Both the position numbers and the translations under genes were made by a program. This document shows, piece after piece, positions 5,306 through 62,300 of a DNA stretch of 64,000 nucleotides. The number at the start of each line of letters is the position of its first letter. Within the stretch, counting starts at the first letter, position 1. The notes beneath the pieces were generated by a model that saw only the letters and a list, made by a program, of their open reading frames with translations, made no database searches and was not told the DNA's origin. Location of the stretch: IMG/VR virus record IMGVR_UViG_3300042502_001233, positions 1-64,000 of that record; one strand, given 5' to 3'.

Positions 5306-5320
5306 AACATTTATGTTTAG

Positions 5321-5393
5321 TTGAGTAAGAGGGTTTCGAACCCTACGCTACCACCCGTCTAGGTGGTCTTCTAACCAATTAAAGTATTACCCA
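5321..5393 (-). tRNA. degenerate tRNA, anticodon uncertain
   Basis: TGGGTAA/TTACTCA acceptor, D and T arms; anticodon loop not 7 nt. Confidence 0.45.
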
Positions 5394-10367: not shown

Positions 10368-10388
10368 CGCTTCCTTCTTTATCATTAG

Positions 10389-10459
10389 AGGCGCCGACTG
10401 GATTCGAACCAGTGTACGGGGATTTGCAGTCCCCTGCCTAGCCACTCGGCCACAGCGCC
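10389..10459 (-). tRNA. tRNA-Cys(GCA)
   Basis: canonical, U73. Confidence 0.95.
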
Positions 10460-18299: not shown

Positions 18300-18509
18300 T
18301 TACCAACTATCGTAGTCGGTTATATCTTTTTTAACTTCAAACAATCCTTTTTCTTTGCTTTTTATAATAACTTCAATGTTATCACCAATACCAGTTGGTG
18401 TAAAGCAAAACGTTCTTGTGTAATATGTCTCATGACCGTATAATGTTTTAACAGCGTCTTCAACTTCTTTTAAGTTTTGTTTTTCTTTTTCGTTTAAACT
18501 AAAATCCAT
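18300..18509 (-). CDS. hypothetical protein
   Basis: MDFSLNEKE...DITDYDSW. Confidence 0.6.
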   Translation of the reverse strand: MDFSLNEKEKQNLKEVEDAVKTLYGHETYYTRTFCFTPTGIGDNIEVIIKSKEKGLFEVKKDITDYDSW

Positions 18510-19798
18510 TAGTGTTCCATTTGTATTAAATGAGAAATTGTACATTGTACTGGATTGTAAATGATAAACTCATCATTTCTCAAGTCAGCACCACCGTGAG
18601 CGTATACGCTATCAAAACCATCCTTTTGGATGTTAGAGTAACTCAAACTATAGCATGATGAATCATGTTTATGAATGTGTTTCTCGTTCCCTAAATGTAC
18701 ATCGAACAATGCCAAGAAACCTATTTGAGAATTCCCTCTAGTCCAATGAGAACCTGATAGAGAACTATACCCTAGCGATTTTTGGCTCTTGTTTGCAAAA
18801 TATACACCATCACCGAACATTGAACCAGTATACACCGCGCCAGAAGGTCTAATCATAAGACCAGTCTGAATAATGTTAAACCAGTTCTCGTTACGCGAAC
18901 CATGCCAGTAAAGTCTTTTCTTTTTAACTTTGGCAGTTTTAAAGTGAGCATCAAACTTAGCTTGTGTAGCCAAGTTAACCACTTTGAAAATCTTTTTAGC
19001 TTTGTTGGCGTTATCACCCAATAATTTGGTGATAAGGTTAAGAGTTTCACTGTCTTTTTCAACTTCAACTTTAAGACCCATTTGAGTAAGAATGTCAATG
19101 TCTGACATTTCTTCACCAGTGGTTTCAACAGTTTGTTTTTGTTGTTTGATAAGTTTAACCTGACCAGACATCGTATCTAACGCGCTTTGTTCTTCACCCA
19201 ACAACCTTTGTGCTTTTTCTAATTCAACATCGTCACCCAACCCTTGAACCAAATGGTTTTTAACGTTGTCCATCTTTCTTGGGATGATTGTGTAAAGCTT
19301 CAACAACTCGTTGTTAACGTCTTTAAGGTCACCACCAACTTTCAACATAGCAGTTACTCTTGATAACACTTCTTGAGCCGATTCCACTTGTTGTTCAGAA
19401 ACTGCATCTTGTGTTACTTTGTAGTTTTTCTGGATAGACTTATTCGCGTATGCCATAAGGTCTTGGACCAATTTCTTAACCATTGCGTCTTTGATTGCTT
19501 CAACGGTATTGTTTTTTGATGCACCGTTTGAATCATCAACAACTGGTTCAGCTAACAATTCAGTTACGTCAGTGTAACCTTTGGTTGATGACGTTTTTTC
19601 GCGTAAGATTTTATCCCACTCGTTTTTACTTTTAAACACAGTAGCCATGTTTTTACCCACTCTACCATACTCACATTTTATTCTACCATCTGAAAGTTCT
19701 TCCATGATGTAGACTTTGTTGCTATTGTCTGTTTTACCATTGTCTACCGACACGTGAATCAGTTTAGCATATCTTAACCCGTTTTCTTTTGTAACCAT
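18509..19798 (-). CDS. PARP-like ADP-ribosyltransferase (WGR + regulatory + catalytic)
   Basis: YGRVG; LYTIIP; YWHGSR, GSMFGDGVYFA, KSLGY, NDEFIIY (H-Y-E triad). Confidence 0.9.
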   Translation of the reverse strand: MVTKENGLRYAKLIHVSVDNGKTDNSNKVYIMEELSDGRIKCEYGRVGKNMATVFKSKNEWDKILREKTSSTKGYTDVTELLAEPVVDDSNGASKNNTVEAIKDAMVKKLVQDLMAYANKSIQKNYKVTQDAVSEQQVESAQEVLSRVTAMLKVGGDLKDVNNELLKLYTIIPRKMDNVKNHLVQGLGDDVELEKAQRLLGEEQSALDTMSGQVKLIKQQKQTVETTGEEMSDIDILTQMGLKVEVEKDSETLNLITKLLGDNANKAKKIFKVVNLATQAKFDAHFKTAKVKKKRLYWHGSRNENWFNIIQTGLMIRPSGAVYTGSMFGDGVYFANKSQKSLGYSSLSGSHWTRGNSQIGFLALFDVHLGNEKHIHKHDSSCYSLSYSNIQKDGFDSVYAHGGADLRNDEFIIYNPVQCTISHLIQMEH

Positions 19799-20444: not shown

Positions 20445-21521
20445 TTATGACAACCCAACTTTTTCGTTTAATCTTTGGGAGAAAAACTTTTTAGAAATTT
20501 CAGAAACATATTTACCAATATCCTTTATTTCTAACCCTTCATCGCTAATAGTTTGAAGCTCTTCTTTTACTATGTCATTCATAACTGATTTTATATATTT
20601 ACCAGTATCTTTAACATCGAAAGTACCACCATTTAACGTGTCAAATGTTTCATTAAGCATTTGTTCAAGTCTCCAAGCTGGGGTGATTTTTTCAGCTAAG
20701 TCTATGCATTTTTGTACCCTCGCATCATCAACTGGTTTGAGTGTTTTAACTTTTGAAACACCAGCGTGTTTCTCACCTTTAGATTTGAAAAAGATTCTAA
20801 CACCATTTTCATCTAAATTTGAAAAAACAATCCCTTCACCTACAGTATTTGGAAAACCAAAGTGTTTAGCCACTGGACATTCGTCTTCAACACTTAAAGT
20901 CATTTCAATCATTTTGTTTTGACTAAGTTCAGGTCTATTAAAATCAATTTCAATTTCATATGTTTGAAAATCTAACATATTGTAAATTCTTTTTTCGTTA
21001 TCCCTGAAACCTGAATAATCGACCCAATAAGCTGGGTTGTTTTTTAATTCTTCTTCATTTTCTACGATAGGTGAAATCTTTATACCATAGATAAACACCG
21101 ATTTTTCAATATTGGTAATACCAACACCTTTTTGAATATTAGAACCAGCCCACTCTGAATAAACACCAATTGTGTTATTATCCAAATCGATACCGTATTT
21201 ATCAGCTATTTCGTTGATGATTCTCAACCAAGATTCTTTTGTTGATTCTGCAAAAAAAGCAAAACCAGCATTGTCGGATTGAGGGGTGATGATATTACCT
21301 CTACTCTGACACCACATACCTGATTTGTTATTAAACAAAACACCAGCTGAAGTACCGTGTAGTTTAACAGTACCAATAAATTTAATAATTGGTTTTGGTT
21401 TAGATGGGTCGTAAATAGGCTCACCATTTTCATCTAAACCACAGAAGTTATGTTTTCTGTTTACATCACTAACAACCTCTCTAAATTGAGGGGTTGATGG
21501 GTATTTTACCATTTTTTTCAT
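20445..21521 (-). CDS. RNA ligase, Rnl2 family
   Basis: KLHGT motif I, GEGIV, FKSK. Confidence 0.8.
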   Translation of the reverse strand: MKKMVKYPSTPQFREVVSDVNRKHNFCGLDENGEPIYDPSKPKPIIKFIGTVKLHGTSAGVLFNNKSGMWCQSRGNIITPQSDNAGFAFFAESTKESWLRIINEIADKYGIDLDNNTIGVYSEWAGSNIQKGVGITNIEKSVFIYGIKISPIVENEEELKNNPAYWVDYSGFRDNEKRIYNMLDFQTYEIEIDFNRPELSQNKMIEMTLSVEDECPVAKHFGFPNTVGEGIVFSNLDENGVRIFFKSKGEKHAGVSKVKTLKPVDDARVQKCIDLAEKITPAWRLEQMLNETFDTLNGGTFDVKDTGKYIKSVMNDIVKEELQTISDEGLEIKDIGKYVSEISKKFFSQRLNEKVGLS

Positions 21522-33066: not shown

Positions 33067-33999
33067 TTAAGTTTGATTTATCAAGTGAATAATTGAAGGG
33101 TTGTAAACTATTATGTGTTTTATATTTTCATAGTCTTTATTTACTATGATTCCGTCAATACCTAAAGAAACACAATTTCTAACAAATTCAACTGGGTTAT
33201 ATCTGTAAAAATCAATCCATACTTGAAGAATGCAGTCTTTTTCGTTATCATTGAAGTTCATACAACCTTCAACAAATTCTTGCATACCTCTTATTGGATT
33301 TTCGTCCCAATTTTGTGCACTACCTTCCCAATCTTCAGCCATCATAGCTAATTTTTTGATATAAGGTCTTAATTTATTTTTGTTTATTGGAACTTGGTCA
33401 AATAAAACTCTTGGTGTTAGTTTTACACTATAGATATTTTCACCATAACGACCAGCTTCTTCTTTTGATGTGGTGAAGTAAATACCTGGACCTTCTAGGT
33501 CATTGGCTTCTTTACCACCAACAAAATCATCCATAAATTTAGTTATTTTGGTTGGGCTACCGTGAAATACGTAGTATTCACCACCATCGATTGATTCTGG
33601 TAATAAATTTTCCCTAAGCAAAGTCTTAATCAAAAACTTATTCTCGTTTAACGAATTTAACATAAAATTACAGTTTGGAAATAAAATAATTTCATTGGTT
33701 TCACCATCTTTCATTGTGATAATCGCATCATAACCCAAACCCATTAATTTTTTTGTTAATTGTTTACCCTTGGCTTTATATTCTTTAGCCAATTCGTATT
33801 TGTAAGAAATTTGGGTGTCATCGTCAACCTCTATTGTAAGTGGATTTTTTATTACAGCCAAACCAGAAACCCATGGTTCTTTAACTGGTCTATCAGTATC
33901 TTTTTCAATCACATATGTACCAGATGGTTCAACATCTTGACCGAACATAGAACCGTAGTATTGTGCTGGTTCCATGTTTTTCATTATCCTTAATATCAT
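33067..33999 (-). CDS. ADP-ribosyltransferase-like (ART-PolyVal-type) protein
   Basis: FHGS, GPGIYFT..A..Y, GIDGII; second degenerate N-terminal copy (GYDAII). Confidence 0.6.
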   Translation of the reverse strand: MILRIMKNMEPAQYYGSMFGQDVEPSGTYVIEKDTDRPVKEPWVSGLAVIKNPLTIEVDDDTQISYKYELAKEYKAKGKQLTKKLMGLGYDAIITMKDGETNEIILFPNCNFMLNSLNENKFLIKTLLRENLLPESIDGGEYYVFHGSPTKITKFMDDFVGGKEANDLEGPGIYFTTSKEEAGRYGENIYSVKLTPRVLFDQVPINKNKLRPYIKKLAMMAEDWEGSAQNWDENPIRGMQEFVEGCMNFNDNEKDCILQVWIDFYRYNPVEFVRNCVSLGIDGIIVNKDYENIKHIIVYNPSIIHLINQT

Positions 34000-39607: not shown

Positions 39608-40801
39608 TCAAGATAATCCTAATAATTTTTTAAATTTATCAGTTTCCATTTTTTGAATGGCTTTTCCAAGTTCAGGTCCAGGACCTATATTGAATTTTTC
39701 CATCGCTTCTGGACCAGTAACTGTTAGTCTGAACTCTTCAAAAGCATCTAGCAATTGTGATGATATACCTTCGTTGCTACCAAAATTTCTAATTTGGTCG
39801 TTGGATACTCCAGAAGTTTGTTGTACTTTCTTTAATAAGTAAGCAGTGTCAACATCTAACTTCAATAATGAAATTAAAAACACAATGGCTTTAATCTCAT
39901 CCGATGAGTATTTTAAATCATTTAGTTTTTTTCTCAATACATCAACGTTGTTACCTTTTAACAACCTAGCTAACAATACTATGTAATCATCAGCTTTGTA
40001 ATCAGAGTTTCTTCTAAATACTCTTGTGTCTACATCCAAATTAGGAAATATCCAATCAAACAATTTGTATTTGTCTAACATCAACAAGTAAGCGTCGGTT
40101 GATTTAGCTGATATAAGCCCTTTGATAAATTCATCTCTAATACGTTCACCAGAAATACCTTCAAGACTAGCATCTTGTTGTAACGCAGCATCTACGTCAG
40201 GGTCCAACCCACTACCAAATCTACCAGCCAGTCTTATACCTCTAAGTTTACGTAATTTATCTTCACTAAACCTGTCTTCTGATTTACCAACAGTGCGTAT
40301 AACAGAATTTTTTAAATCAACGATACCACCTACTAAATCTACTACTTCTTGGGTGTCCATATCATAAAACAAAGCATTTACACTAAAATCTCTTCTTAAA
40401 ACATCAGATTTTATATCTGAAAATTCAACGTAATCTGGTCGTCTACCATCACTACTACCGATATCTTTACGCATAGTAGCTATCTCATATTCACCATCTG
40501 TAGTTATAACATTAACCACACCAAACGCTTTACCTGTTTCCAATATATTTGTAACAAATTCTTGATTTTTTAATAAATTTATTACGTTATCTGGTGTGGC
40601 ATTTGTTACTAAATCAAAATCTTTTGGTGTTACATTAAGTAACATATCACGAACTGACCCACCAATAGGGTATAATTCAAAACCATTTTTTTTAAAAATT
40701 GAATGAATTTTATTAACATTTGTCGGAAATTTAAAATAAATTTTTAATCTCTTCTCTGATGTTAAATTTTTTTTTAAAATTTCCTTTATAATTGTTTTCA
40801 T
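39608..40801 (-). CDS. cca: CCA-adding tRNA nucleotidyltransferase (class II)
   Basis: GGSVRD..DFD, EIAT.R, RRDFSVNA, EDKLR.LR; most tRNAs here lack an encoded CCA. Confidence 0.88.
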   Translation of the reverse strand: MKTIIKEILKKNLTSEKRLKIYFKFPTNVNKIHSIFKKNGFELYPIGGSVRDMLLNVTPKDFDLVTNATPDNVINLLKNQEFVTNILETGKAFGVVNVITTDGEYEIATMRKDIGSSDGRRPDYVEFSDIKSDVLRRDFSVNALFYDMDTQEVVDLVGGIVDLKNSVIRTVGKSEDRFSEDKLRKLRGIRLAGRFGSGLDPDVDAALQQDASLEGISGERIRDEFIKGLISAKSTDAYLLMLDKYKLFDWIFPNLDVDTRVFRRNSDYKADDYIVLLARLLKGNNVDVLRKKLNDLKYSSDEIKAIVFLISLLKLDVDTAYLLKKVQQTSGVSNDQIRNFGSNEGISSQLLDAFEEFRLTVTGPEAMEKFNIGPGPELGKAIQKMETDKFKKLLGLS

Positions 40802-43586: not shown

Positions 43587-43608
43587 AGTTTCTATTATTT
43601 AAAGTTTG

Positions 43609-43683
43609 AGGTCGGAGAGAGATTTGAACTCCCACCGTAAAGGTTCTTGCGGAACCAGTGCCTTACCATTCGACCATCCGACC
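43609..43683 (-). tRNA. atypical tRNA-Cys(GCA)-like
   Basis: GGTCGGA/TCCGACC, U73, GGTT-CCGCAAG-AACC. Confidence 0.6.
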
Positions 43684-44290: not shown

Positions 44291-44350
44291 AATTTCTAAT
44301 TTTTTGTTTATTATAAATATACCACACTTTTAAAAAATGTAAAGTGTTTG

Positions 44351-44423
44351 TAGTTCTAATCGGACTCGAACCGATATCTCTCCGTTTTAGAGGCGGGTGT
44401 ATTCACGTTAATACTATAGAACC
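44351..44423 (-). tRNA. amber suppressor tRNA (anticodon CTA)
   Basis: GGTTCTA/TAGAACT acceptor, loop CT-CTA-AA, canonical T arm; weak anticodon stem. Confidence 0.8.
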
Positions 44424-51859: not shown

Positions 51860-52183
51860 TTATGATAGAAGTTCGATTCTTCCTCTGGATATATCTTTAA
51901 GACTTGCAGTCTTGTTGGTTATGTGGTCAACTACCACCCCATCCTTGACTCTGTACGTTCTTCGTTTGTCGCTTCTGTCACCTTTACCGATTTGTTCACG
52001 TCTCTCGTCAACGCTTTCTTGTATGTGACCAGTTCTGTAATATTCGTTCACACGCTTTTTAAGCTCTTTTAAGGCATCTTCTTTGTTCTGGTGTTGATTC
52101 CTTCCATCTCGAACTACTTTGAGCCCTGTGGCCGCGTGTGTGACTACTACACATGAATCTGTGGTATTTTTGTGCTGACCACC
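51860..52183 (-). pseudogene. orphaned 3' part of release factor gene starting at GGQ
   Basis: GGQHKNTTDSCVVVTH...KRRTYRVKD...IELLS homologous to the end of 55208..55891. Confidence 0.88.
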
Positions 52184-52186
52184 AAA

Positions 52187-52510
52187 TTAAACGGCACGAT
52201 ATTCATTAAGCATTTTTTTAATATATTCCCAACAAATATTTGCGTTTTTAAATTCAACATCACCAAATTGACATAATCTCGTGTATTCTTCATCAATTTC
52301 ATTGGAAAATTTAGTGCTATATTTTTTCACATCATCTTTTGATAATTCGTAAAAACTAGGTAAACCATTTTTAACTAAAATATTAGAAAACGCTTCAATT
52401 CTAGTATCTTTATCACCACTATAAAAATGGTCAATCATCTGACAACGACTAGAAATAAGTTCTTCAACTACTTCTAAAGCTTTTATTTTATTTTTAATAT
52501 CTTTTTTCAC
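52187..52510 (-). CDS. hypothetical cargo protein
   Basis: 107-aa ORF following the GHKL gene. Confidence 0.6.
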   Translation of the reverse strand: MKKDIKNKIKALEVVEELISSRCQMIDHFYSGDKDTRIEAFSNILVKNGLPSFYELSKDDVKKYSTKFSNEIDEEYTRLCQFGDVEFKNANICWEYIKKMLNEYRAV

Positions 52511-52512
52511 GA

Positions 52513-54051
52513 TTAATAAATTATAAATTTTCGTAACCTTTCACTAACTTTAATGAAATATTCGGTTAACATTATTTCTTTTTCAGTATCATTATAATAC
52601 TCAATATCAGCTAAAGCCAACCCTAATGAAGCTAATAACTTAAAAGCTACATCTTTAGTTTCAAAGTTAGTTTTACTCATAAATTTAGACCAAAAAGGAT
52701 GTTCTTGATTTATTTCTAAAATATATAGACCTTGTTCTTTAACCGTTTTAAACATCAAACCATTTTCACCTAATTTAATAAATCTATAATCAAAAAATTT
52801 ATCATCTCTGACTCTAGTTTGATTTGGTTTACTTCCTGGTTTAACCGTTTCTTTCTTTTCAACTGGTGTCTCACGTTTTGTGTTCATACCCCTTTCTTTT
52901 TTAATATCAATAAAACGGTTATTATTGATACTTTTAGTTGACTCATCTAACTCTTTTTTAACATCCTCAGTCAACTCTATATTCAATGTTTGGTCTTCTC
53001 TACTTCTGATTGTTTTAATATAAGGTTGGATAGCATTTCTACAAATATCTTTAAACCCTTGGTCAATATCATTTTTATCCTTTTCATGTATCATTTTATT
53101 GAAAGTTGACCCGAATAAGTCATCACCACTACCATTAACAAATAATTCAATTCTAACACCATTAGAATACCCATCACCTATTTTACCCACAATACCTAAA
53201 TCCAAACCAGCCCCAACTAAACGTTTATTTCTATAAATATAAAGGCCAGCATTACTACTATTTCTACCAATTTTTGTTGATAATGAAGTACTAACACCTT
53301 CTAAATTATAAACACTAAATTTAATTTCATTCTCACCATAAACTATTTTTTCATTTGATGTGAGACATTTGGAGTAAAATTCTTTACGAAACATTGGGTC
53401 GAAAGATTCAACTAACTCATCGTTAACAAATAATTTAACATTTAATTCATCAATAAAATATTTGAAATATAAACTAAGTTTACTTTTTAAAATATCTTTA
53501 AAAATAGAAGGGTTTGAATTTGATACTTTATCAAGTTTATATAATTTAATAATAGTACCTGTATCAGAACCAACGTCTTCTTTAAACGATTCTAATTCTT
53601 CTGGAGTACCAGTTCTAATAGGAATAATAAAAGTATTTTGGTCTAACAAAACCTCTAAATCATAAGTGGCAATATATAATGAACCATTTTCACTTTTTGT
53701 TATCACATCAAAAGCTTTACCGATAGATAAGGCAGCAGCTTTAAGACCAGTACCATATGAACCTAAATCGAACTCTCTGTTTTTACCAGTTAAAGCACCA
53801 AGTTTAAATGCTTCTTTTAACGTTTCTAAATCCATACCACAACCATCATCACAAATTTTAATGTGGTCATACTCATCTTTGATTTTCTTAATTGTAATTT
53901 TAACGTTTTTTGAGTTAACGTTTGTGTCTAGTGAATTATCAATAATATCAGCAATTGCCGCATAATTATTGTAACCAGAATTTCTTAAAGTCGCTAAGAA
54001 ATTGACATTTGGAGTTACATCCAAACCATTTGTTTCGTTTAATTTTTCCAT
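52513..54051 (-). CDS. MORC-like GHKL ATPase
   Basis: AIADIIDNSLD, DDGCGM, GSYGTGLK, GT. Confidence 0.85.
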   Translation of the reverse strand: MEKLNETNGLDVTPNVNFLATLRNSGYNNYAAIADIIDNSLDTNVNSKNVKITIKKIKDEYDHIKICDDGCGMDLETLKEAFKLGALTGKNREFDLGSYGTGLKAAALSIGKAFDVITKSENGSLYIATYDLEVLLDQNTFIIPIRTGTPEELESFKEDVGSDTGTIIKLYKLDKVSNSNPSIFKDILKSKLSLYFKYFIDELNVKLFVNDELVESFDPMFRKEFYSKCLTSNEKIVYGENEIKFSVYNLEGVSTSLSTKIGRNSSNAGLYIYRNKRLVGAGLDLGIVGKIGDGYSNGVRIELFVNGSGDDLFGSTFNKMIHEKDKNDIDQGFKDICRNAIQPYIKTIRSREDQTLNIELTEDVKKELDESTKSINNNRFIDIKKERGMNTKRETPVEKKETVKPGSKPNQTRVRDDKFFDYRFIKLGENGLMFKTVKEQGLYILEINQEHPFWSKFMSKTNFETKDVAFKLLASLGLALADIEYYNDTEKEIMLTEYFIKVSERLRKFIIY

Positions 54052-54420: not shown

Positions 54421-54588
54421 ATGGGAAGAAAAGCAAAACTACAAGAAGAGAAAAAAGGTAAACTATCAATCACCATCTCATCCGATAACTATGAAATACT
54501 AGTTAATGAAAACATCAATAAATCTAAATTAATCGATTGGTTATTAGAACAACATTTTAACTCTTTAAACAATGGGAAGGGTGCTTAA
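54421..54588 (+). CDS. small RHH-like protein
   Basis: MGRKAKLQEEKK...NKSKLIDWLLEQHF. Confidence 0.7.
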   Translation: MGRKAKLQEEKKGKLSITISSDNYEILVNENINKSKLIDWLLEQHFNSLNNGKGA

Positions 54589-55195
54589 TGATGAACAGAA
54601 AAAAGCTAGAGCTGAATACCAAAAAGCTTGGCGAGAAGCTAATAAAGAACGTTTAGCTGAATGGCATAGAGAATATAGAAAGAATAACCCAGAAAAGAAC
54701 AAAACCAACACTAAAGCGTATAGAGAGCGTCACCCAGAAAAAGCAAAAGAATCAACTAAAAAATATAAAGCGAATAATCAAGACAAAATTAAAGCTGCAT
54801 CAATAGTGTATAGAGGTAGAAAACTTGAATTACATAATATCAAAAAAGCTAATGACCCAGTGTATAATTTAAAATGTACTGTTAGAAGCGGTATATTAAA
54901 ATCTTTCTCCAGAATCAACGCTAAGAAAAACAATAAAACAGTTGAAATTCTAGGATGTTCTTATGAGTTTTTAAAAGAACATATTGAATCAAAATTTGAA
55001 CCATGGATGACTTGGGGCAACAAAGGTCTTTATAATGGTGAATTAAACTACGGTTGGGATGTAGACCACATCATACCACTGGATACAGCGGTGACCGAAG
55101 AAGATGTGATTAGACTTAACCATTATACCAACCTACAACCACTTTGTAGTAAAATCAATCGAGATATTAAAAAAAATAACCCTAGTTACTACTAG
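54572..55195 (+). CDS. HNH homing endonuclease
   Basis: WDVDHIIP...HYTNLQPLC; close paralog of 49644..50309. Confidence 0.85.
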   Translation: MGRVLNDEQKKARAEYQKAWREANKERLAEWHREYRKNNPEKNKTNTKAYRERHPEKAKESTKKYKANNQDKIKAASIVYRGRKLELHNIKKANDPVYNLKCTVRSGILKSFSRINAKKNNKTVEILGCSYEFLKEHIESKFEPWMTWGNKGLYNGELNYGWDVDHIIPLDTAVTEEDVIRLNHYTNLQPLCSKINRDIKKNNPSYY

Positions 55196-55207
55196 GGTTA
55201 TTTATTA

Positions 55208-55891
55208 TTATGAAAGAAGCTCTATTTTACCTCTTAATATGTCTTTTAGACTAGCAGTCTTATTAGTGATATGGTCTACAACCATATCATCCTTTACACG
55301 ATAAGTCCTTCTTTTATCGGCACGACCACCTTCACCAATTTGTTCATTACGGTTTTCAATGGTTAATGAATCATGACCTGTTTTATAAAAGTTATTAACC
55401 CTTTGAGTTAATTCAGCAATCGCTGCTTCTTTATTTTGGTGTTGACTTCGACTATCACGTCTAACTTTAATCCCAGTTGCTATATGAGTTACAACAACAC
55501 ATGATTCAGTTTTATTCCTTTTTTGCCCACCGTTCCCAGTTCCTCTGGTTGTTTCCAAACGATATTCACTAGGATGTAATTCTACTTCCTTATAATCGTT
55601 TTCTTCCATAAGTGCTACGGTGATTGAACTTGTATGAACCCTACCTTTTCTTTCGGTTGGTGGTACTCTTTGCCACCTATGTGAACCTACATGGTTTAAG
55701 AACACATTTTTAACATTATATCCAGATATTCAGATAGTTATCATACCATCTTTCTCATCAATAACTTTAGCTTCAAATGAATAATTTTTGCAAGCTTTTA
55801 AAAAAATATCTCGCATATCTTTAATTAATAATTTTGAATCATCACCGCCTTCTGACGCTCTTAATTCTAATAAAATTTTATTTGTTTTCAT
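55208..55891 (-). CDS. class I peptide chain release factor-like protein (no domain 1) with in-frame TGA at codon 54
   Basis: LELRASEGG..., HRWQRVPPTERKGRVHTS, GGQ; frame continuous across TGA 55730-55732. Confidence 0.85.
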
Positions 55892-56669
55892 TGTATTTTG
55901 GTCTATTTAAATTGCCTTCATATATAACACCGTTTATTTCCCTTGTTGTTCCCCACATTGGTCTAAGATTCGATAAAGCGTTTACCACACTGGCTGGAGT
56001 TTCTGGTGGAAAACTAATAATTTGTTTTATATGGTCTATGTGCCATTCTCCATAATTATCCCATGTCATTCCGTCAGTAAATAAGTTTGTGATATGTTCT
56101 TTAAATTCTAAAGCTGAATAGCCTAACATATCTATGGTCTTACCAGTTTTTTTGTTATGTAAATCACGTAGCGAATTTTTTAATATTCGCCTCCAAGCTA
56201 TTACGTGTGGGTTTTTTTGATTATATAATTTAGCGTTTTCTTTTATTTTTTCTTTATTATTTTTTCTATATTCTTTACCGTAAGCTGATTTTTTTTCACG
56301 ATTATCTATTAAATATTGTTTGTCATACGCTTTTTTCTTTTCTTTATTTAACGCAACGTATTCTTTATTTTTTTGTTTAACATATTCAATATTTTCTTTA
56401 CGATATTCTTTTTGATAATTATTTCGTTTATCTTTATTTTCCAAACGGTGGTTAATAAAATACTCATTTAACTTTTCTTTATTCTTTTCCCTATACTTTG
56501 CATCGAGTAACTTCTTTTTTTGTAAAGAAACATCACTATGGATTTTCACATCAGGATATAACTCCCTTAACTGTTTAACCGTTAAATTGTGTGATTTTAA
56601 ATGTTTGGTCGATAATGAAGATAAATCTTTTCCACATACTGGACAAGTTACAAATGAAGATGGTTCCAT
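55878..56669 (-). CDS. HNH homing endonuclease
   Basis: CPVC..HL..H, K/E repeats, WHIDHI...NLRPMW..N. Confidence 0.85.
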   Translation of the reverse strand: MEPSSFVTCPVCGKDLSSLSTKHLKSHNLTVKQLRELYPDVKIHSDVSLQKKKLLDAKYREKNKEKLNEYFINHRLENKDKRNNYQKEYRKENIEYVKQKNKEYVALNKEKKKAYDKQYLIDNREKKSAYGKEYRKNNKEKIKENAKLYNQKNPHVIAWRRILKNSLRDLHNKKTGKTIDMLGYSALEFKEHITNLFTDGMTWDNYGEWHIDHIKQIISFPPETPASVVNALSNLRPMWGTTREINGVIYEGNLNRPKYNENK

Positions 56670-56731
56670 AATATTCTTTTATAATAAATATCACAAATAA
56701 TTAAAAAAACCACAAATGGCAAAGAATTCCA

Positions 56732-56926
56732 TTCGTTCTTAAAGATTTCTTTTGCGTTTTTACCCGTTAGTCAGATGCTAACAAATCCTAACCTATCTTC
56801 GGTTATTATTCAGTCGATGTTATTGTTCTTCGCTGTTTTAATGTAAATGTCGCGCATTTCACAAACCAACAGCTTCGCATCGGTTCCACCTTCTGCGTCT
56901 CGGATTTCTAAATTAATTTTTCCCAT
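56732..56926 (-). pseudogene. orphaned original 5' part of release factor gene (two in-frame TGA)
   Basis: MGKINLEIRDAEGGTDAK...ID*II...FVSI*LTGKNAKEIFKNE. Confidence 0.85.
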
Positions 56927-57053: not shown

Positions 57054-57057
57054 CTAG

Positions 57058-57145
57058 TTGCGGAAGTAGGACTCGAACCTACAACACAGTGTTACTGCTC
57101 CTCTAGGTTATGAGCCTAGCATGTTTCCATTTCCACCATTCCGCG
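57058..57145 (-). tRNA. tRNA-Met(CAT), initiator-like C1:A72, long variable arm
   Basis: CTAGG-CTCATAA-CCTAG + 20-nt variable arm. Confidence 0.8.
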
Positions 57146-57152
57146 ATGTATT

Positions 57153-57812
57153 TTATTTTCTACCCTTAACCCAACCTTCGTTCAGATAAGTTTCAAGGTT
57201 TTCTTTTTTTATCTTTTTGTTAGCACCGTCTCTGGTTATCCAACACGTACCGTATTGACTATTTGTTTCACCAATACCAGTACCTTTTCTTTTTTCAGAG
57301 ATTAAACGTTTAGATTCTTCAGCATGATTTTTACCAGTCCAATCTAGATTTTTTAATTTATTCTGTCTGTATTCTTCATTTTCCCAAGCTATTTTATTAA
57401 CATGAGAATTGAATCTACTTAACCAGTTTTCATCACCACCGAACTTTTCTTTTAAAACTTCGTCAGTTTTTTTTCTACCAGCTTTAACACATTTAAACAT
57501 ATGTTCTTCATTGATAAAACCACCACCTTCACCACCAAGAGCCAAATTCATACATTTGGAATCTGAAATTAATTCTTTATTAACAATTTCTTTTTCTCTT
57601 TTAGCTAATTCTTCTCTATTTTCTAAAAATTCTAGAATCTCTTTTGTGTGATTTTCTTTACCGTATTTTCTAATAGAACGTCTTAATGTTTTACCACTAC
57701 CTATATAACCATCTTCTAAGTTATACGTGCTATGCATTCCGATGTACCATCGTCCTGTTATATTACACGTTGTTTTATAAATGTAGTGTATGTTTTTTTC
57801 TTTTCTTGCCAT
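57153..57812 (-). CDS. GIY-YIG (Seg-like) homing endonuclease
   Basis: paralog of 36217..36849. Confidence 0.88.
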   Translation of the reverse strand: MARKEKNIHYIYKTTCNITGRWYIGMHSTYNLEDGYIGSGKTLRRSIRKYGKENHTKEILEFLENREELAKREKEIVNKELISDSKCMNLALGGEGGGFINEEHMFKCVKAGRKKTDEVLKEKFGGDENWLSRFNSHVNKIAWENEEYRQNKLKNLDWTGKNHAEESKRLISEKRKGTGIGETNSQYGTCWITRDGANKKIKKENLETYLNEGWVKGRK

Positions 57813-58849: not shown

Positions 58850-59227
58850 TGGTGGAGTTATGGGGAATCGAACCCCAGTGTTGCATATTCTTCAAAAGCT
58901 TTCTACATGTTTATCTAGTTTCTAATTCTAGCAAAGTTGTGCTGCGTTATTTATCCCGATGGAAGTGCAGCGACCATCGTTCCTTTTTTTACAACTAGGA
59001 AGTTGGTTCTTGGTGATTTATCACCATCAAGTGGAATTACCACTATTAGCTATAATTAGGCTACAGCTACCTCTCCTGCGAAACTGAATGCAGCTTCGTT
59101 AAGGAAATTTTCAGAAACGATGAAATCGTTGTCAATTCAATTTTTTAATAGACAGATTAAAGTGCTTCCAATCTAGCACTACATGCTTACGATTTACGAC
59201 TATATCCAGTCAATACCGTTTAACCCC
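58850..59227 (-). ncRNA. ssrA: tmRNA
   Basis: GGGGTTA/TAACTCC-A-CCA acceptor with G3:U70, T arm, tag ORF DNDFIVSENFLNEAAFSFAGEVAVA*. Confidence 0.9.
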
Positions 59228-61280: not shown

Positions 61281-62300
61281 TTATCCTTTATTTGCAAGTT
61301 TTTCTTTAAGATTTATCACAGCTTCTTTAGCTTCATCATCCAAAACTTTAGGTATTTCAATACCTAACGTAACTATAAGGTCACCTCTACCATCTTTACC
61401 GTATACACTAACACCTTTAAACGGAACTCTAAGGTTAGTACCAACGTCGCTATACTCTGGAACACTCATTCTTATTTTGTTACCTTCAATTGTGTCTATT
61501 TCTACTTTGTCACCCAAAACCAATTGTGGATAAGATAGTTTAAGATTCATCTTTAAATCAGGACCTATTCTAGTAAAGACTTTATGTGGTAACTCAATAA
61601 TTTTTATGTGTAAATCACCATTGTTTCCTGATTTAACACCTTGACCTTTACCCTCCATTACAAATGTCATCCCATTTTGAATACCAGCTGGAACTGTAAC
61701 TTGTACAGTTTCTTTTATGTTTGTTAACCCACTACCACTACATGTGTTACAAGGAGTTCTATGTTTGGTCCCAGTAGCGTCACATGAAGGGCAAGGTTGT
61801 GTTGTTTGAAAAACACCCATTGGAGTTCTGGTAAGACTTGTTACCATACCGCTACCATTACAAGATGGACAATCATATGGGTCAGTACCACCGTGACCTT
61901 CGCAGTCTGTACAACTAACATTTCTGTTGTAGTTATAGGTTTTATTCACCCCAGAGAATATTTCTTCAAGGGTTAATTTAACAGTTAAGCTAAGAGTTTC
62001 ACCAACCCTAACTTGTTTATGACCTTGGTTGAAATGACGACCAAAGATATCATGAAAACCTCTAAACATATCATCTGGGTTGCCTCTGTTATCTGAATTG
62101 TGTCCAAATCTGTCATATTTTGCTTTTTTATCATCATCGGACAAAACTTCATAAGCTTCAGACACTTCTTTGAACTTATCTTCATCACCACCCTTATCTG
62201 GGTGTAACTCTTTGGCTAGCTTTCTATAAGCTTTCTTGATTTCATCTTGTGAAGCGCCTTTGGCTAACCCTAAAACCTCATAATAATCTCTTTTACTCAT
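61281..62300 (-). CDS. dnaJ: DnaJ chaperone
   Basis: J domain HPD, four CxxCxGxG repeats. Confidence 0.95.

What the first reader, a model, noticed from the sequence alone, without database searches (positions are those of the whole stretch)
55208..56926. Release factor gene with a conserved in-frame UGA, retained in two diverged copies of its 5' end
The functional ORF 55891-55208 has TGA at codon 54 (MITI*ISG) with no frameshift needed. The orphaned, clearly diverged original 5' end has TGA at the homologous position (FVSI*LTG), in the same ATC-TGA context, plus a second TGA. Conservation between diverged copies argues for programmed readthrough rather than decay. Established: prfB is autoregulated at an internal UGA, but through a +1 frameshift. 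Inference: this phage RF is made only when UGA termination fails (RF2 depleted or inhibited). It lacks domain 1 and has an RF1-type PxT motif (PPT), so its specificity is open.
Basis: partly seen in the sequence, partly recalled or inferred. Interest (0 to 1): 0.88.

Follow-up and report, generated by a model that had tools for sequence, protein, structure and literature searches.

The report
Phage release factor gated by stop codon
A lake-water giant phage carries a short RF1-like translation termination factor whose gene contains a deliberately kept in-frame UGA stop, and nearly every relative of this gene carries a similar premature stop or a prfB-style frameshift site, so the factor appears to be made only when normal termination is leaky.

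Summary
The gene 55891..55208 (-) encodes RF1 domains 2-4 (GGQ, PPT, no domain 1) with an in-frame TGA at 55732-55730. It is identical in at least five lake metagenomes.

In 156 of 157 related loci from phage, metagenome and bacterial contigs, the first ~55 codons hold a premature stop. It is either in-frame (TGA, sometimes TAG) or sits in a +1 frameshift cassette (CTT TGA C, CTT TAG C or CTT TAA C).

Internal TGAs are followed by A or C, never T. Terminal TGAs are mostly followed by T. Codons between and after the stops are under purifying selection. No other gene in 92 kb of this phage has an in-frame TGA (267 TGG codons).

The "W" that database homologs show at this site is TGA translated with code 4.

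The orphan 5' end is genuine. There is also an orphan 3' end (52213..51863). Two paralogous HNH-like endonuclease cassettes each displaced one gene end with a diverged replacement copy.

Best reading: a selected sentinel stop makes synthesis depend on readthrough, analogous to prfB control. The trigger and the inserted residue are untested. I found no description of this in the literature.

The parts
55208..55891 (-). Intact short release-factor gene (227 codons with the TGA counted; RF1 domains 2-4; GGQ; PPT). It is a three-part mosaic: a new 5' end (55891-55682), the original middle (55681-55527) and a new 3' end (55526-55208).
   Evidence: Pfam PCRF + RF-1. NCBIfam best match is prfA at 158 bits, below its cutoff. 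PDB sequence matches are to RF1. An AF2 model of the close homolog P0003 matches RF1 over its full length. The mosaic was shown by 30-nt identity windows against L014 and by the joints in run X8.
55730..55732 (-). In-frame sentinel TGA (codon 54), context ATC TGA ATA, with A as the +4 base.
   Evidence: Identical in L001/L002 and in runs X3, X5 and X6. Family-wide +4 bias: A 44, C 30, G 2, T 0.
56729..56926 (-). Orphaned original 5' end of the RF gene (codons 1-66). It has TGAs at 56812-56810 and 56773-56771.
   Evidence: HMM hit over positions 1-66 at 82.8 bits. 193/195 nt identical to the intact gene of L014. Its homology to L014 ends at 56732.
55878..56669 (-). HNH-like homing endonuclease 1 (263 aa). 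It is part of cassette 1 (56731-55682), which brought the new 5' end. Its stop overlaps the RF start.
   Evidence: It carries a WHIDHI...NLRP motif and is a paralog of ORF 54572-55195 (E 4e-18). The same ORF end precedes the same RF allele in another metagenome (L245). Cassette 1 is absent from L014 and from the X8 contig.
54572..55195 (+). HNH-like endonuclease 2 (207 aa), convergent with the RF gene. It lies in cassette 2 (55526-52179), which brought the new 3' end.
   Evidence: phrog_1035 'endonuclease VII'. Paralog of HNH-1. Cassette 2 is absent from L014 and from the X8 contig.
55174..55203 (-). Terminator-like hairpin just after the intact RF gene (it reads as a hairpin on both strands).
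51863..52213 (-). Orphaned original 3' end of the RF gene (HMM positions 109-225). It is followed by the original terminator at 51858-51837.
   Evidence: HMM hit at 195 bits. About 94% nt identity to L014 from 52183 onward. Terminator.
52513..54051 (-). GHKL/HATPase_c_3 ATPase (512 aa) carried inside cassette 2. It is cargo, not part of the RF.
   Evidence: Pfam HATPase_c_3. PADLOC MzaB-like at 70.9 bits.

Best explanation
What it is. The gene encodes a mobile-element-borne, domain-1-less paralog of release factor RF1. Its mRNA carries a selected sentinel stop codon.

How it most likely works. Ribosomes that terminate at UGA-54 make only a 53-residue peptide. The full factor is made only by ribosomes that decode the UGA in frame. 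It needs the upstream helix that recognises U1 of the stop codon plus the downstream PPT and GGQ parts. In-frame decoding is most simply by a near-cognate tRNA, classically tRNA-Trp. Output is therefore kept low and rises when termination at that codon is inefficient. This is functionally analogous to prfB autoregulation.

Family context. The same requirement is met interchangeably by one or two in-frame UGAs, by an in-frame UAG, or by a +1 frameshift cassette (CUU UGA C, CUU UAG C or CUU UAA C).

Local history. In this phage the gene was invaded twice by HNH-like homing-endonuclease cassettes. Each cassette carries a diverged replacement copy of the gene end it displaced. Both the old and the new 5' ends keep the sentinel UGA.

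Shown: the anatomy, the conservation, purifying selection across the stops, the weak-context bias, the absence of genome-wide TGA recoding in 92 kb, and the mosaic history.

Inferred: that readthrough occurs, which residue is inserted, that RF2 activity is the sensed variable, and what the factor does for the phage.
For: 1. 156 of 157 loci with a visible 5' part carry a premature stop in the first ~55 codons: 62 in-frame and 94 with a +1 shift. Only L126 lacks one.
2. The same holds in bacterial genomes. Archangium, Minicystis, Thiobacillus and Pyxidicoccus carry cassettes. Standard-code Variovorax megaplasmids carry GGC TGA CTC, and RefSeq splits the gene into a 56-aa and a 172-aa CDS.
3. On the tree of 132 distinct body sequences the nine labels need at least 39 changes. 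TGA and TAG swap between near relatives, and TAA intermediates exist. Only one sequence lacks a stop.
4. pN/pS is 0.43 between the two TGAs and 0.18 after the second one, before any start codon.
5. Internal TGA +4 base: A 44, C 30, G 2, T 0. Terminal TGA-T: 16 of 23 (Fisher p = 2e-13). Leu after an internal TGA is always CTN, although 75% of this phage's Leu codons are TTR.
6. In 92 kb of this phage, which includes GH19 and Amidase_2 lysis-type genes, there is no other in-frame TGA against 267 TGG. No tRNA(UCA) is among the window's 32 tRNAs.
7. Piece 1 aligns to T. thermophilus RF1 residues 107-147, which include G116 and E119. The modelled full-length homolog matches RF1.
8. From the literature: UGA-C is a weak stop in prfB (PMC12421855). 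UGA readthrough inserts Trp. In B. subtilis it rises from 6% to 19-54% in prfB mutants (PMC7918605).
Against: - No expression or protein data exist, so readthrough is not demonstrated.
- Many alleles, including the orphan copy, carry two UGAs. Their joint near-cognate readthrough would be very inefficient unless RF2 is strongly impaired or a dedicated decoder exists.
- The decoding motifs are RF1-type. The product should not recognise UGA, so the loop is not a closed prfB-style feedback in this phage.
- The sentinel's identity changes freely with the same PPT motif. A simple RF2-sensor model does not explain this.
- About 270 kb of the genome was not examined.
- The loci are phylogenetically non-independent, so the p-values overstate significance.
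Confidence: 0.6

Rival explanations
1. Code switch or dedicated suppressor. The phage turns UGA into a sense codon (Trp or Cys) at some stage of infection. The RF1-like gene, like late genes, is simply written in that code, so the TGA acts as a timing device rather than a sensor of termination capacity.
For: - Public gene callers chose code 4 for many short contigs of this family.
- Many alleles need two UGAs decoded.
- TGA-recoded phages are reported to carry RF1 (bioRxiv 10.1101/2021.08.26.457843).
- The gene lies in a translation cluster with a tmRNA, two tRNA-Met, an amber-suppressor tRNA(CUA) and a tRNA-Cys(GCA) with an unusual C33 loop.
- Frameshift-type alleles have Cys codons where in-frame alleles have TGA.
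Against: - No tRNA(UCA) in the window or in 60 related loci.
- No other in-frame TGA in 92 kb, which includes lysis-type genes, against 267 TGG codons.
- No interrupted neighbouring genes in about 150 kb of flanks of TGA+TGA alleles.
- Family members with in-frame TGA or cassettes occur in standard-code bacteria.
- Sister phages with the same synteny use a UAG frameshift instead.
- In the published model the code-change module itself is written in standard code.
Confidence: 0.2
2. Split or alternative products. The functional products are the 53-residue N-terminal peptide and/or a C-terminal protein started internally (GTG 55705, or ATG 55609 as JGI called it), not a readthrough fusion.
For: JGI and RefSeq annotate two separate ORFs. 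GGQ-domain-only rescue factors such as ArfB exist. A weak ArfB-model hit was seen at 25 bits.
Against: - No conserved internal start exists. The segment between the two TGAs has no start codon yet is under purifying selection.
- Frameshift alleles can only yield a fusion.
- An internal start would remove the U1-recognition helix. The JGI start would also remove PPT.
- The ArfB score is far below its cutoff of 100 bits.
Confidence: 0.07
3. Decay. The TGAs are nonsense mutations in a dying gene.
For: TGA is one mutation away from TGG or TGY. The locus has been disrupted by mobile elements, and two fragments are certainly dead.
Against: - The stop is conserved in 156 of 157 loci and is the only lesion in each gene.
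- pN/pS is below 1, there is a strong +4 context bias, and GGQ and PPT are intact.
- The sequence is identical in several lakes.
Confidence: 0.03
4. Selenocysteine insertion at UGA, suggested by the UGA/Cys pairing between alleles.
For: Cys codons align with the TGAs in frameshift-type alleles.
Against: - The stop occurs at four or more different sites and is sometimes TAG or TAA.
- There is no tRNA-Sec.
- No Rfam hit lies near the gene.
- There is no convincing hairpin downstream of the TGA (z = -2.1, and the small stem lies upstream of and over the TGA).
Confidence: 0.02

Closest known systems
prfB (RF2) autoregulatory +1 programmed frameshift (CUU UGA C with an upstream SD-like element)
   Same: It is a release-factor gene with a premature in-frame stop in a weak context. 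Full-length product requires failure to terminate. Many family members carry the very cassette: GGAGG-type element, ~3 nt spacer, CTT TGA C.
   Different: - The window's allele needs in-frame readthrough, not a shift.
- The site lies in domain 2 (RF1 residues ~140-155), not in domain 1.
- The protein is RF1-type.
- UAG and UAA also serve as the sentinel. PMC12421855 states TAG is not found at the prfB site and that prfA shows no programmed frameshift.
Bacterial RF1 (prfA)
   Same: Best sequence and fold match. GGQ, a PxT-type tripeptide (PPT), and the Gln and His-Thr of the RF1 decoding pocket are present.
   Different: It has no domain 1 (~105 residues missing). It scores 158 bits against cutoffs of 400 and 423. 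It is carried by phages and megaplasmids. It has an obligatory premature stop.
PrfH/RFH (domain-1-less RF paired with an RtcB-like gene; PMC1586002)
   Same: Both are short class-I RF paralogs that lack domain 1 and keep GGQ.
   Different: RFH has an SxY tripeptide and an obligatory upstream partner gene. Here the tripeptide is PPT and there is no partner. The TIGR03072 score is 66 bits against a cutoff of 166.65.
Code-change modules of stop-codon-recoded phages (Borges et al., bioRxiv 10.1101/2021.08.26.457843)
   Same: A phage-encoded RF lies next to a suppressor tRNA and other translation genes. RF1 is the factor expected to accompany a UGA reassignment.
   Different: No UGA suppressor tRNA and no other recoded gene were found in 92 kb. 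Here the RF gene itself carries the stop, whereas the published modules are written in standard code.
Free-standing homing endonuclease insertions that split or partly duplicate a phage gene (for example mobE in Aeromonas phage Aeh1 nrdA; recalled from memory)
   Same: An HNH-type ORF sits inside a conserved gene, is absent from close relatives, and gene function is preserved.
   Different: Here two paralogous cassettes each bring a diverged replacement end. This leaves orphan 5' and 3' fragments, not a gene in pieces.

Membership tests
RF1 (prfA) equivalog | Whole-protein score above the curated NCBIfam cutoff | tested here: not met
   NF001859 scored 158.2 bits against a cutoff of 400. TIGR00019 scored 153.1 against 423.25. 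Both are for the 173-aa piece; the 53-aa piece adds about 22 bits.
RF1 (prfA) equivalog | GGQ motif, PxT tripeptide and the RF1-type third-base pocket (Gln before PxT; His-Thr after) | tested here: met
   GNGGQ and WQRVPPTERKGRVHTS align to RF1 VQRVPxTE..GRIHTS.
RF1 (prfA) equivalog | N-terminal domain 1 | tested here: not met
   The protein starts at Pfam PCRF profile position 99 of 194 and at T. thermophilus RF1 residue ~103-107. Upstream lies an HNH-like ORF, or a tRNA in relatives.
prfB-type autoregulatory recoding | Premature in-frame stop in a weak context early in an RF gene | tested here: met
   TGA-A at codon 54. Family-wide, the base after an internal TGA is A or C in 74 of 76 cases.
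prfB-type autoregulatory recoding | CUU-stop-C slippery site with the downstream frame at +1 | tested here: not met
   The window reads ATC TGA ATA and homology continues in frame 0. The feature is met in 94 related loci and in bacterial genomes.
prfB-type autoregulatory recoding | The product recognises the sentinel stop (closed feedback loop) | not testable with these tools
   The RF1-type motifs predict UAA/UAG recognition, not UGA. Release assays are needed.
PrfH/RFH | SxY tripeptide, an upstream RtcB-like partner gene, and the TIGR03072 cutoff | tested here: not met
   The tripeptide is PPT. The neighbours are an HNH-like ORF and tRNAs. The score is 66 bits against 166.65.
ArfB | GGQ domain plus a C-terminal tail, ~140 aa, above the NF006718 cutoff | tested here: not met
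   25.2 bits against a cutoff of 100, and only residues 47-80 match.
Stop-codon-recoded phage (TGA to Trp) | In-frame TGAs in other (late or lysis) genes, and a UGA suppressor tRNA | tested here: not met
   No such gene in 92 kb, against 267 TGG codons. No tRNA(UCA) among the window's 32 tRNAs. About 270 kb remain unexamined.
HNH homing endonuclease cassette | HNH-type nuclease motif | tested here: inconclusive
   A DH..N..N-type motif is seen by eye. phrog_1035 'endonuclease VII' matches only the 207-aa ORF. There is no Pfam HNH hit.
HNH homing endonuclease cassette | Insertion polymorphism inside a conserved target gene | tested here: met
   L014 and a contig in run X8 carry the uninterrupted gene. 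The joints are 56732>55681 and 55527>52178.

The most novel reading that the evidence does not exclude
A widespread family of short RF1-type factors is carried by giant phages, megaplasmids and some bacterial chromosomes. Under this reading it is a fail-safe release factor whose synthesis is universally gated by a sentinel stop codon. The sentinel can be UGA, UAG or UAA. It can be read through in frame or bypassed by a prfB-like +1 shift. This would be the first RF1-type gene with recoding control and the first release factor gated by readthrough.

Because the sentinel's identity drifts freely under one PPT motif, the factor may act on all three stops or independently of the codon.

A bolder sub-case: the conserved neighbouring tRNA-Cys(GCA), which has C33 in its anticodon loop, decodes the UGA as Cys.
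Probability: 0.4. Interest if true: 0.9.

Novelty: new variant of a known kind. Interest (0 to 1): 0.85.

Why it matters
Recoding control of release-factor genes has been a textbook case confined to prfB. A 2025 survey states that prfA shows no programmed frameshift and that TAG never occupies the prfB site (PMC12421855).

Here an RF1-type family shows the same logic in several interchangeable forms, including plain in-frame stops.

- **Regulation.** This points to strong, general selection for coupling RF dosage to termination capacity.
- **Phage biology.** Giant phages may monitor or buffer the host's termination machinery. The gene sits beside a tmRNA, tRNAs, a CCA-adding enzyme and an RNA ligase.
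- **Annotation.** Pipelines mis-handle the family in two ways. Some split it into two ORFs. Others choose code 4, which yields a spurious Trp at the site and could suggest genetic-code reassignment where there is none.
- **Testability.** Cultured carriers (Variovorax, Archangium, Thiobacillus) make it directly testable.

Tried and rejected
1. **Trp in homologs.** I first read the W in 225-aa database homologs as a Trp codon. This is rejected. Those proteins come from loci with TGA and do not translate to the query in code 11.
2. **Genome-wide TGA or TAG recoding.** ORF-length comparison under codes 4, 15 and 11, and a search for same-frame segment pairs, gave only spurious antisense or intergenic cases.
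3. **Motif against sentinel.** The tripeptide motif does not correlate with the sentinel stop type. PPT dominates every class.
4. **Readthrough-stimulating RNA structure.** Only a weak fold was found (z = -2.1), with a small hairpin lying upstream of and over the TGA. It is not convincing.
5. **Promoters.** The promoter scan is no better than shuffled sequence.
6. **Hirsh-type feature in the phage tRNA-Trp(CCA).** Inspected by eye; nothing diagnostic.
7. **Annotated cultured phages.** None carries the family. Only unannotated huge-phage records (LR7565xx) and host-contaminant prfA hits were found.
8. **Literature.** Seven searches found no description of this family or its recoding.
9. **Genome walk.** I walked from 64 kb to 92 kb without reaching structural genes and stopped there.
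Full report
**1. The observation**

On the minus strand, ATG 55891 to TAA 55210-55208 is one reading frame with homology to class-I release factors on both sides of a single TGA. The TGA is at 55732-55730 (codon 54...GMITI*ISGYNV...).

- The 53-codon piece matches Pfam PCRF profile positions 99-144.
- The 173-codon piece matches PCRF 168-194 plus the whole RF-1 domain.
- NCBIfam ranks prfA first (158 bits), then prfB (89), prfH (66) and ArfB (25). All are below their cutoffs.

The upstream fragment starts at ATG 56926. It matches the family profile over positions 1-66 and has TGAs at codons 39 and 52.

The sequence, including the TGA and both insertion junctions, is identical in two IMG/VR contigs. 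It is also identical in contigs from three further lake-water runs. The window equals positions 1-64000 of a 362,018-bp JGI contig.

**2. What the protein is**

- Piece 1 aligns to T. thermophilus RF1 residues 107-147. This is the strand and helix whose tip (G116, E119) reads U1 of the stop codon (the role of these residues is from my own knowledge of the RF1-ribosome structures).
- Piece 2 aligns to RF1 from the SG motif to the C-terminus. It keeps WQRVPPTE..GRVHTS and GGQ.
- An AlphaFold model was built for P0003, a close database homolog (89% identical over the body, with W written at the stop). It has mean pLDDT 78. Its best PDB matches are ribosome-bound RF1 chains over about 230 columns at 33-35% identity.
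- There is no domain 1. The gene starts 14 nt inside the end of the preceding ORF. In uninterrupted relatives a tRNA-Met and a terminator lie upstream.

**3. The family**

I fetched 164 related loci from viral and metagenome contigs, then 80 from bacterial genome records. I searched three-frame translations, with stops masked, using an HMM of the family.

Of 157 loci whose 5' part is on the contig, 156 have a premature stop within the first ~55 codons. The forms are:

- **In-frame TGA** at one or two sites. There are four or more distinct sites in different subgroups. One of them aligns with the conserved Trp of RF1 'RRW'.
- **In-frame TAG** at the same sites in a few lineages. Examples are TGA-44 plus TAG-52 in L036, L037, L039, L097 and L099.
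- **+1 frameshift cassettes**: CTT TAG C, CTT TGA C, and twice CTT TAA C. In the GC-rich group they are preceded by a GGAGG-like element about 3 nt upstream, which is the canonical prfB arrangement.

Close relatives of the window (73-76% identical protein, same synteny) have TGY CTT TAG CGG one codon downstream of the position of the window's TGA.

A caution applies to database proteins. Those of 225-228 aa that show W at these sites are translations of TGA under code 4:

- They are letter-for-letter the loci that carry TGA.
- The stored genes do not translate to the query in code 11.
- No locus has TGG at a sentinel site.

**4. Evidence for selection**

- A maximum-likelihood tree of 132 distinct body sequences needs at least 39 changes of recoding type. 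TGA and TAG cassettes alternate between near relatives. Only one sequence lacks a stop. Because 5' modules recombine (section 6), some of these changes are exchanges of modules. Every module nevertheless carries a stop.
- Among eight distinct two-TGA alleles, pN/pS is 0.23 before the first TGA, 0.43 between the TGAs, 0.18 after the second TGA, and 0.16 further on.
- Of 76 internal TGAs in distinct genes, the next base is A in 44, C in 30, G in 2 and T in 0. The true terminators of the same genes are TAA-T (64 of 106) or TGA-T (16 of 23) (Fisher p = 2e-13).
- Leu after an internal TGA is always CTN, although 75% of this phage's Leu codons are TTA or TTG.
- These statistics are inflated by shared ancestry, but the direction is uniform across independent sites.

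**5. Not a change of genetic code, as far as sampled**

- In the window plus 28 kb reached by walking along the contig (92 kb in all), the RF gene is the only real gene with an in-frame TGA. The other same-frame pairs are an antisense artefact and a lipoprotein gene that starts just after a TGA.
- Long ORFs on the coding strand hold 267 TGG codons.
- The 92 kb includes GH19 and Amidase_2 lysis-type genes that are intact in code 11.
- The window's 32 tRNAs include an amber suppressor, tRNA(CUA), but no tRNA(UCA). None was found in 60 related loci either.
- Flanks of two-TGA alleles (~150 kb) show no interrupted neighbouring genes.
- Family members also occur in standard-code bacteria. Archangium gephyra and Pyxidicoccus carry CTT TAG C. 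Minicystis rosea and Thiobacillus denitrificans carry CTT TGA C. Four Variovorax megaplasmids carry an in-frame GGC TGA CTC. RefSeq annotates that gene as a 56-aa hypothetical protein followed by a 172-aa 'peptide chain release factor-like protein'.

**6. Local history**

Relative L014 is 92-95% identical in the flanks and carries the uninterrupted gene. Thirty-nucleotide identity windows give the following:

| Segment | Identity to L014 |
|---|---|
| Intact gene, nt 1-205 | ~55% |
| Intact gene, nt 211-355 | 96% |
| Intact gene, nt 361-684 | ~65% |
| Orphan 5' fragment | 99% |
| Orphan fragment 52213..51863 | ~94% |

A contig in run X8 joins 56732 to 55681 (with 9 nt between) and 55527 to 52178. 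This is the uninterrupted form.

So two cassettes invaded the gene:

- **Cassette 1 (56731-55682)** is an HNH-like ORF plus a diverged 5' end. The same pairing occurs in another metagenome.
- **Cassette 2 (55526-52179)** is a diverged 3' end, a terminator, a paralogous HNH-like ORF on the other strand (E 4e-18; phrog 'endonuclease VII'), two small ORFs, a GHKL ATPase (MzaB-like) and a 116-aa ORF.

Each cassette keeps the gene whole while leaving the displaced end as an orphan. Both the old and the new 5' modules carry the sentinel TGA at the homologous codon.

**7. Mechanism**

The simplest reading is that the stop is a selected attenuator or sensor. Termination at UGA-A yields a 53-residue peptide. 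In-frame decoding yields the factor.

Supporting literature:

- UGA is the leakiest stop, and Trp is the residue inserted in enterobacteria (PMC7918605).
- In B. subtilis, readthrough rose from 6% to 19-54% in prfB mutants (PMC7918605).
- prfB itself uses a weak UGA-C (PMC12421855).

Output should therefore rise when RF2 is limiting.

Two facts complicate it. The product looks RF1-specific, so it would not close a feedback loop on UGA. The family also swaps UGA, UAG and UAA freely under the same PPT motif. There are three possible resolutions:

- The device mainly caps dosage. Excess RF is toxic according to PMC12421855.
- It reports general termination capacity.
- The factor acts on all three stops.

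Alleles with two UGAs would need either strong loss of RF2 activity or a dedicated decoder.

One lead concerns the inserted residue. Frameshift-type alleles have Cys codons exactly where in-frame alleles have TGA. The gene is also linked in the whole clade to a tRNA-Cys(GCA) with an unusual CCGCAAG anticodon loop, with C at position 33. Decoding of UGA by tRNA-Cys(GCA) has a precedent in Euplotes (from memory). This lead is weak. The Cys at the second site may instead belong to the frameshift signal, and the tRNA is present in both allele classes.

**8. Comparison with the known, and novelty**

- The control logic is that of prfB. The membership test for a prfB-type site fails in this allele (no slippery site, frame 0) and is met in sister alleles.
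- The protein is an RF1 paralog, not prfA (below cutoffs, no domain 1). It is not PrfH (PPT rather than SxY, no RtcB-like partner; PMC1586002). It is not ArfB.
- The published code-change modules of recoded phages differ in the ways listed in section 5.
- I found no paper describing the family or its recoding in seven full-text searches. The library is incomplete, so prior description cannot be excluded.

**9. Verdict**

I rate the finding a new variant of a known kind, of high interest, and directly testable in cultured carriers.

Noticed in passing
window 51863-52213 (-): A second dead fragment of the release-factor gene: the original 3' end (HMM positions 109-225), followed by its own terminator at 51858-51837.
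   Followed up: yes
window 58850-59227 (-): A phage-encoded tmRNA (Rfam RF00023, 63 bits) lies upstream of the RF gene. ARAGORN missed it in the window but finds tmRNAs at the same place in relatives (L003, L027, L029-31, L035, L040, L089). The conserved gene order is tmRNA, two tRNA-Met, RF, tRNA(CUA), tRNA-Cys.
   Followed up: partly
window 44350-44423 (-): An amber-suppressor-type tRNA with anticodon CTA (ARAGORN labels it 'Pyl'), conserved ~2 kb downstream of the RF gene in most close relatives. No gene with a convincing in-frame TAG was found in 92 kb. The discriminator base is A in some relatives and U in others.
   Followed up: partly
window 43608-43683 (-): A tRNA-Cys(GCA) with an unusual anticodon loop, CCGCAAG (C instead of the near-universal U at position 33), and discriminator U73. 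The loop is conserved in relatives (L012, L013, L020, L025, L029). The window's other tRNA-Cys (10388-10459) has a canonical CTGCAAA loop.
   Followed up: partly
window 5320-5393 (-): A tRNA-like gene that ARAGORN reports with a four-base anticodon (agac). Related loci L033 and L104 have one with (ccta).
   Followed up: no
window 57153-57812 (-): A GIY-YIG homing endonuclease (PADLOC HEase, 77 bits; weak Pfam SegE hit) sits between the two tRNA-Met genes. The segment is different in L014 and present in L020, so it is a third mobile endonuclease within 6 kb.
   Followed up: partly
window 52513-54051 (-) and 52190-52540 (-): Cargo of the second cassette: a 512-aa GHKL ATPase (HATPase_c_3) resembling MzaB of a candidate defence system, followed by a 116-aa ORF with a faint methyltransferase-like hit.
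   Followed up: partly
window 57057-57145 (-): The tRNA-Met next to the RF gene is 89 nt long (83-89 nt in relatives). This is much longer than a normal elongator or initiator tRNA-Met.
   Followed up: no
window 18509-19798, 20445-21521, 33067-33999, 39608-40801, 61281-62300 (all -): The window is rich in RNA-repair and host-takeover functions: a PARP-like protein, an RNA ligase, an ADP-ribosyltransferase, a CCA-adding enzyme and DnaJ, alongside 32 tRNA genes. This fits a translation-maintenance region.
   Followed up: no
L247 3779-4483 (Variovorax sp. WDL1 plasmid 2, NZ_LR594690.1 61340-62044): RefSeq annotates this family member as two genes: a 56-aa hypothetical protein and a 172-aa 'peptide chain release factor-like protein'. 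They are separated only by an in-frame TGA. JGI likewise-aa and 133-aa ORFs in the window's contig.
   Followed up: yes
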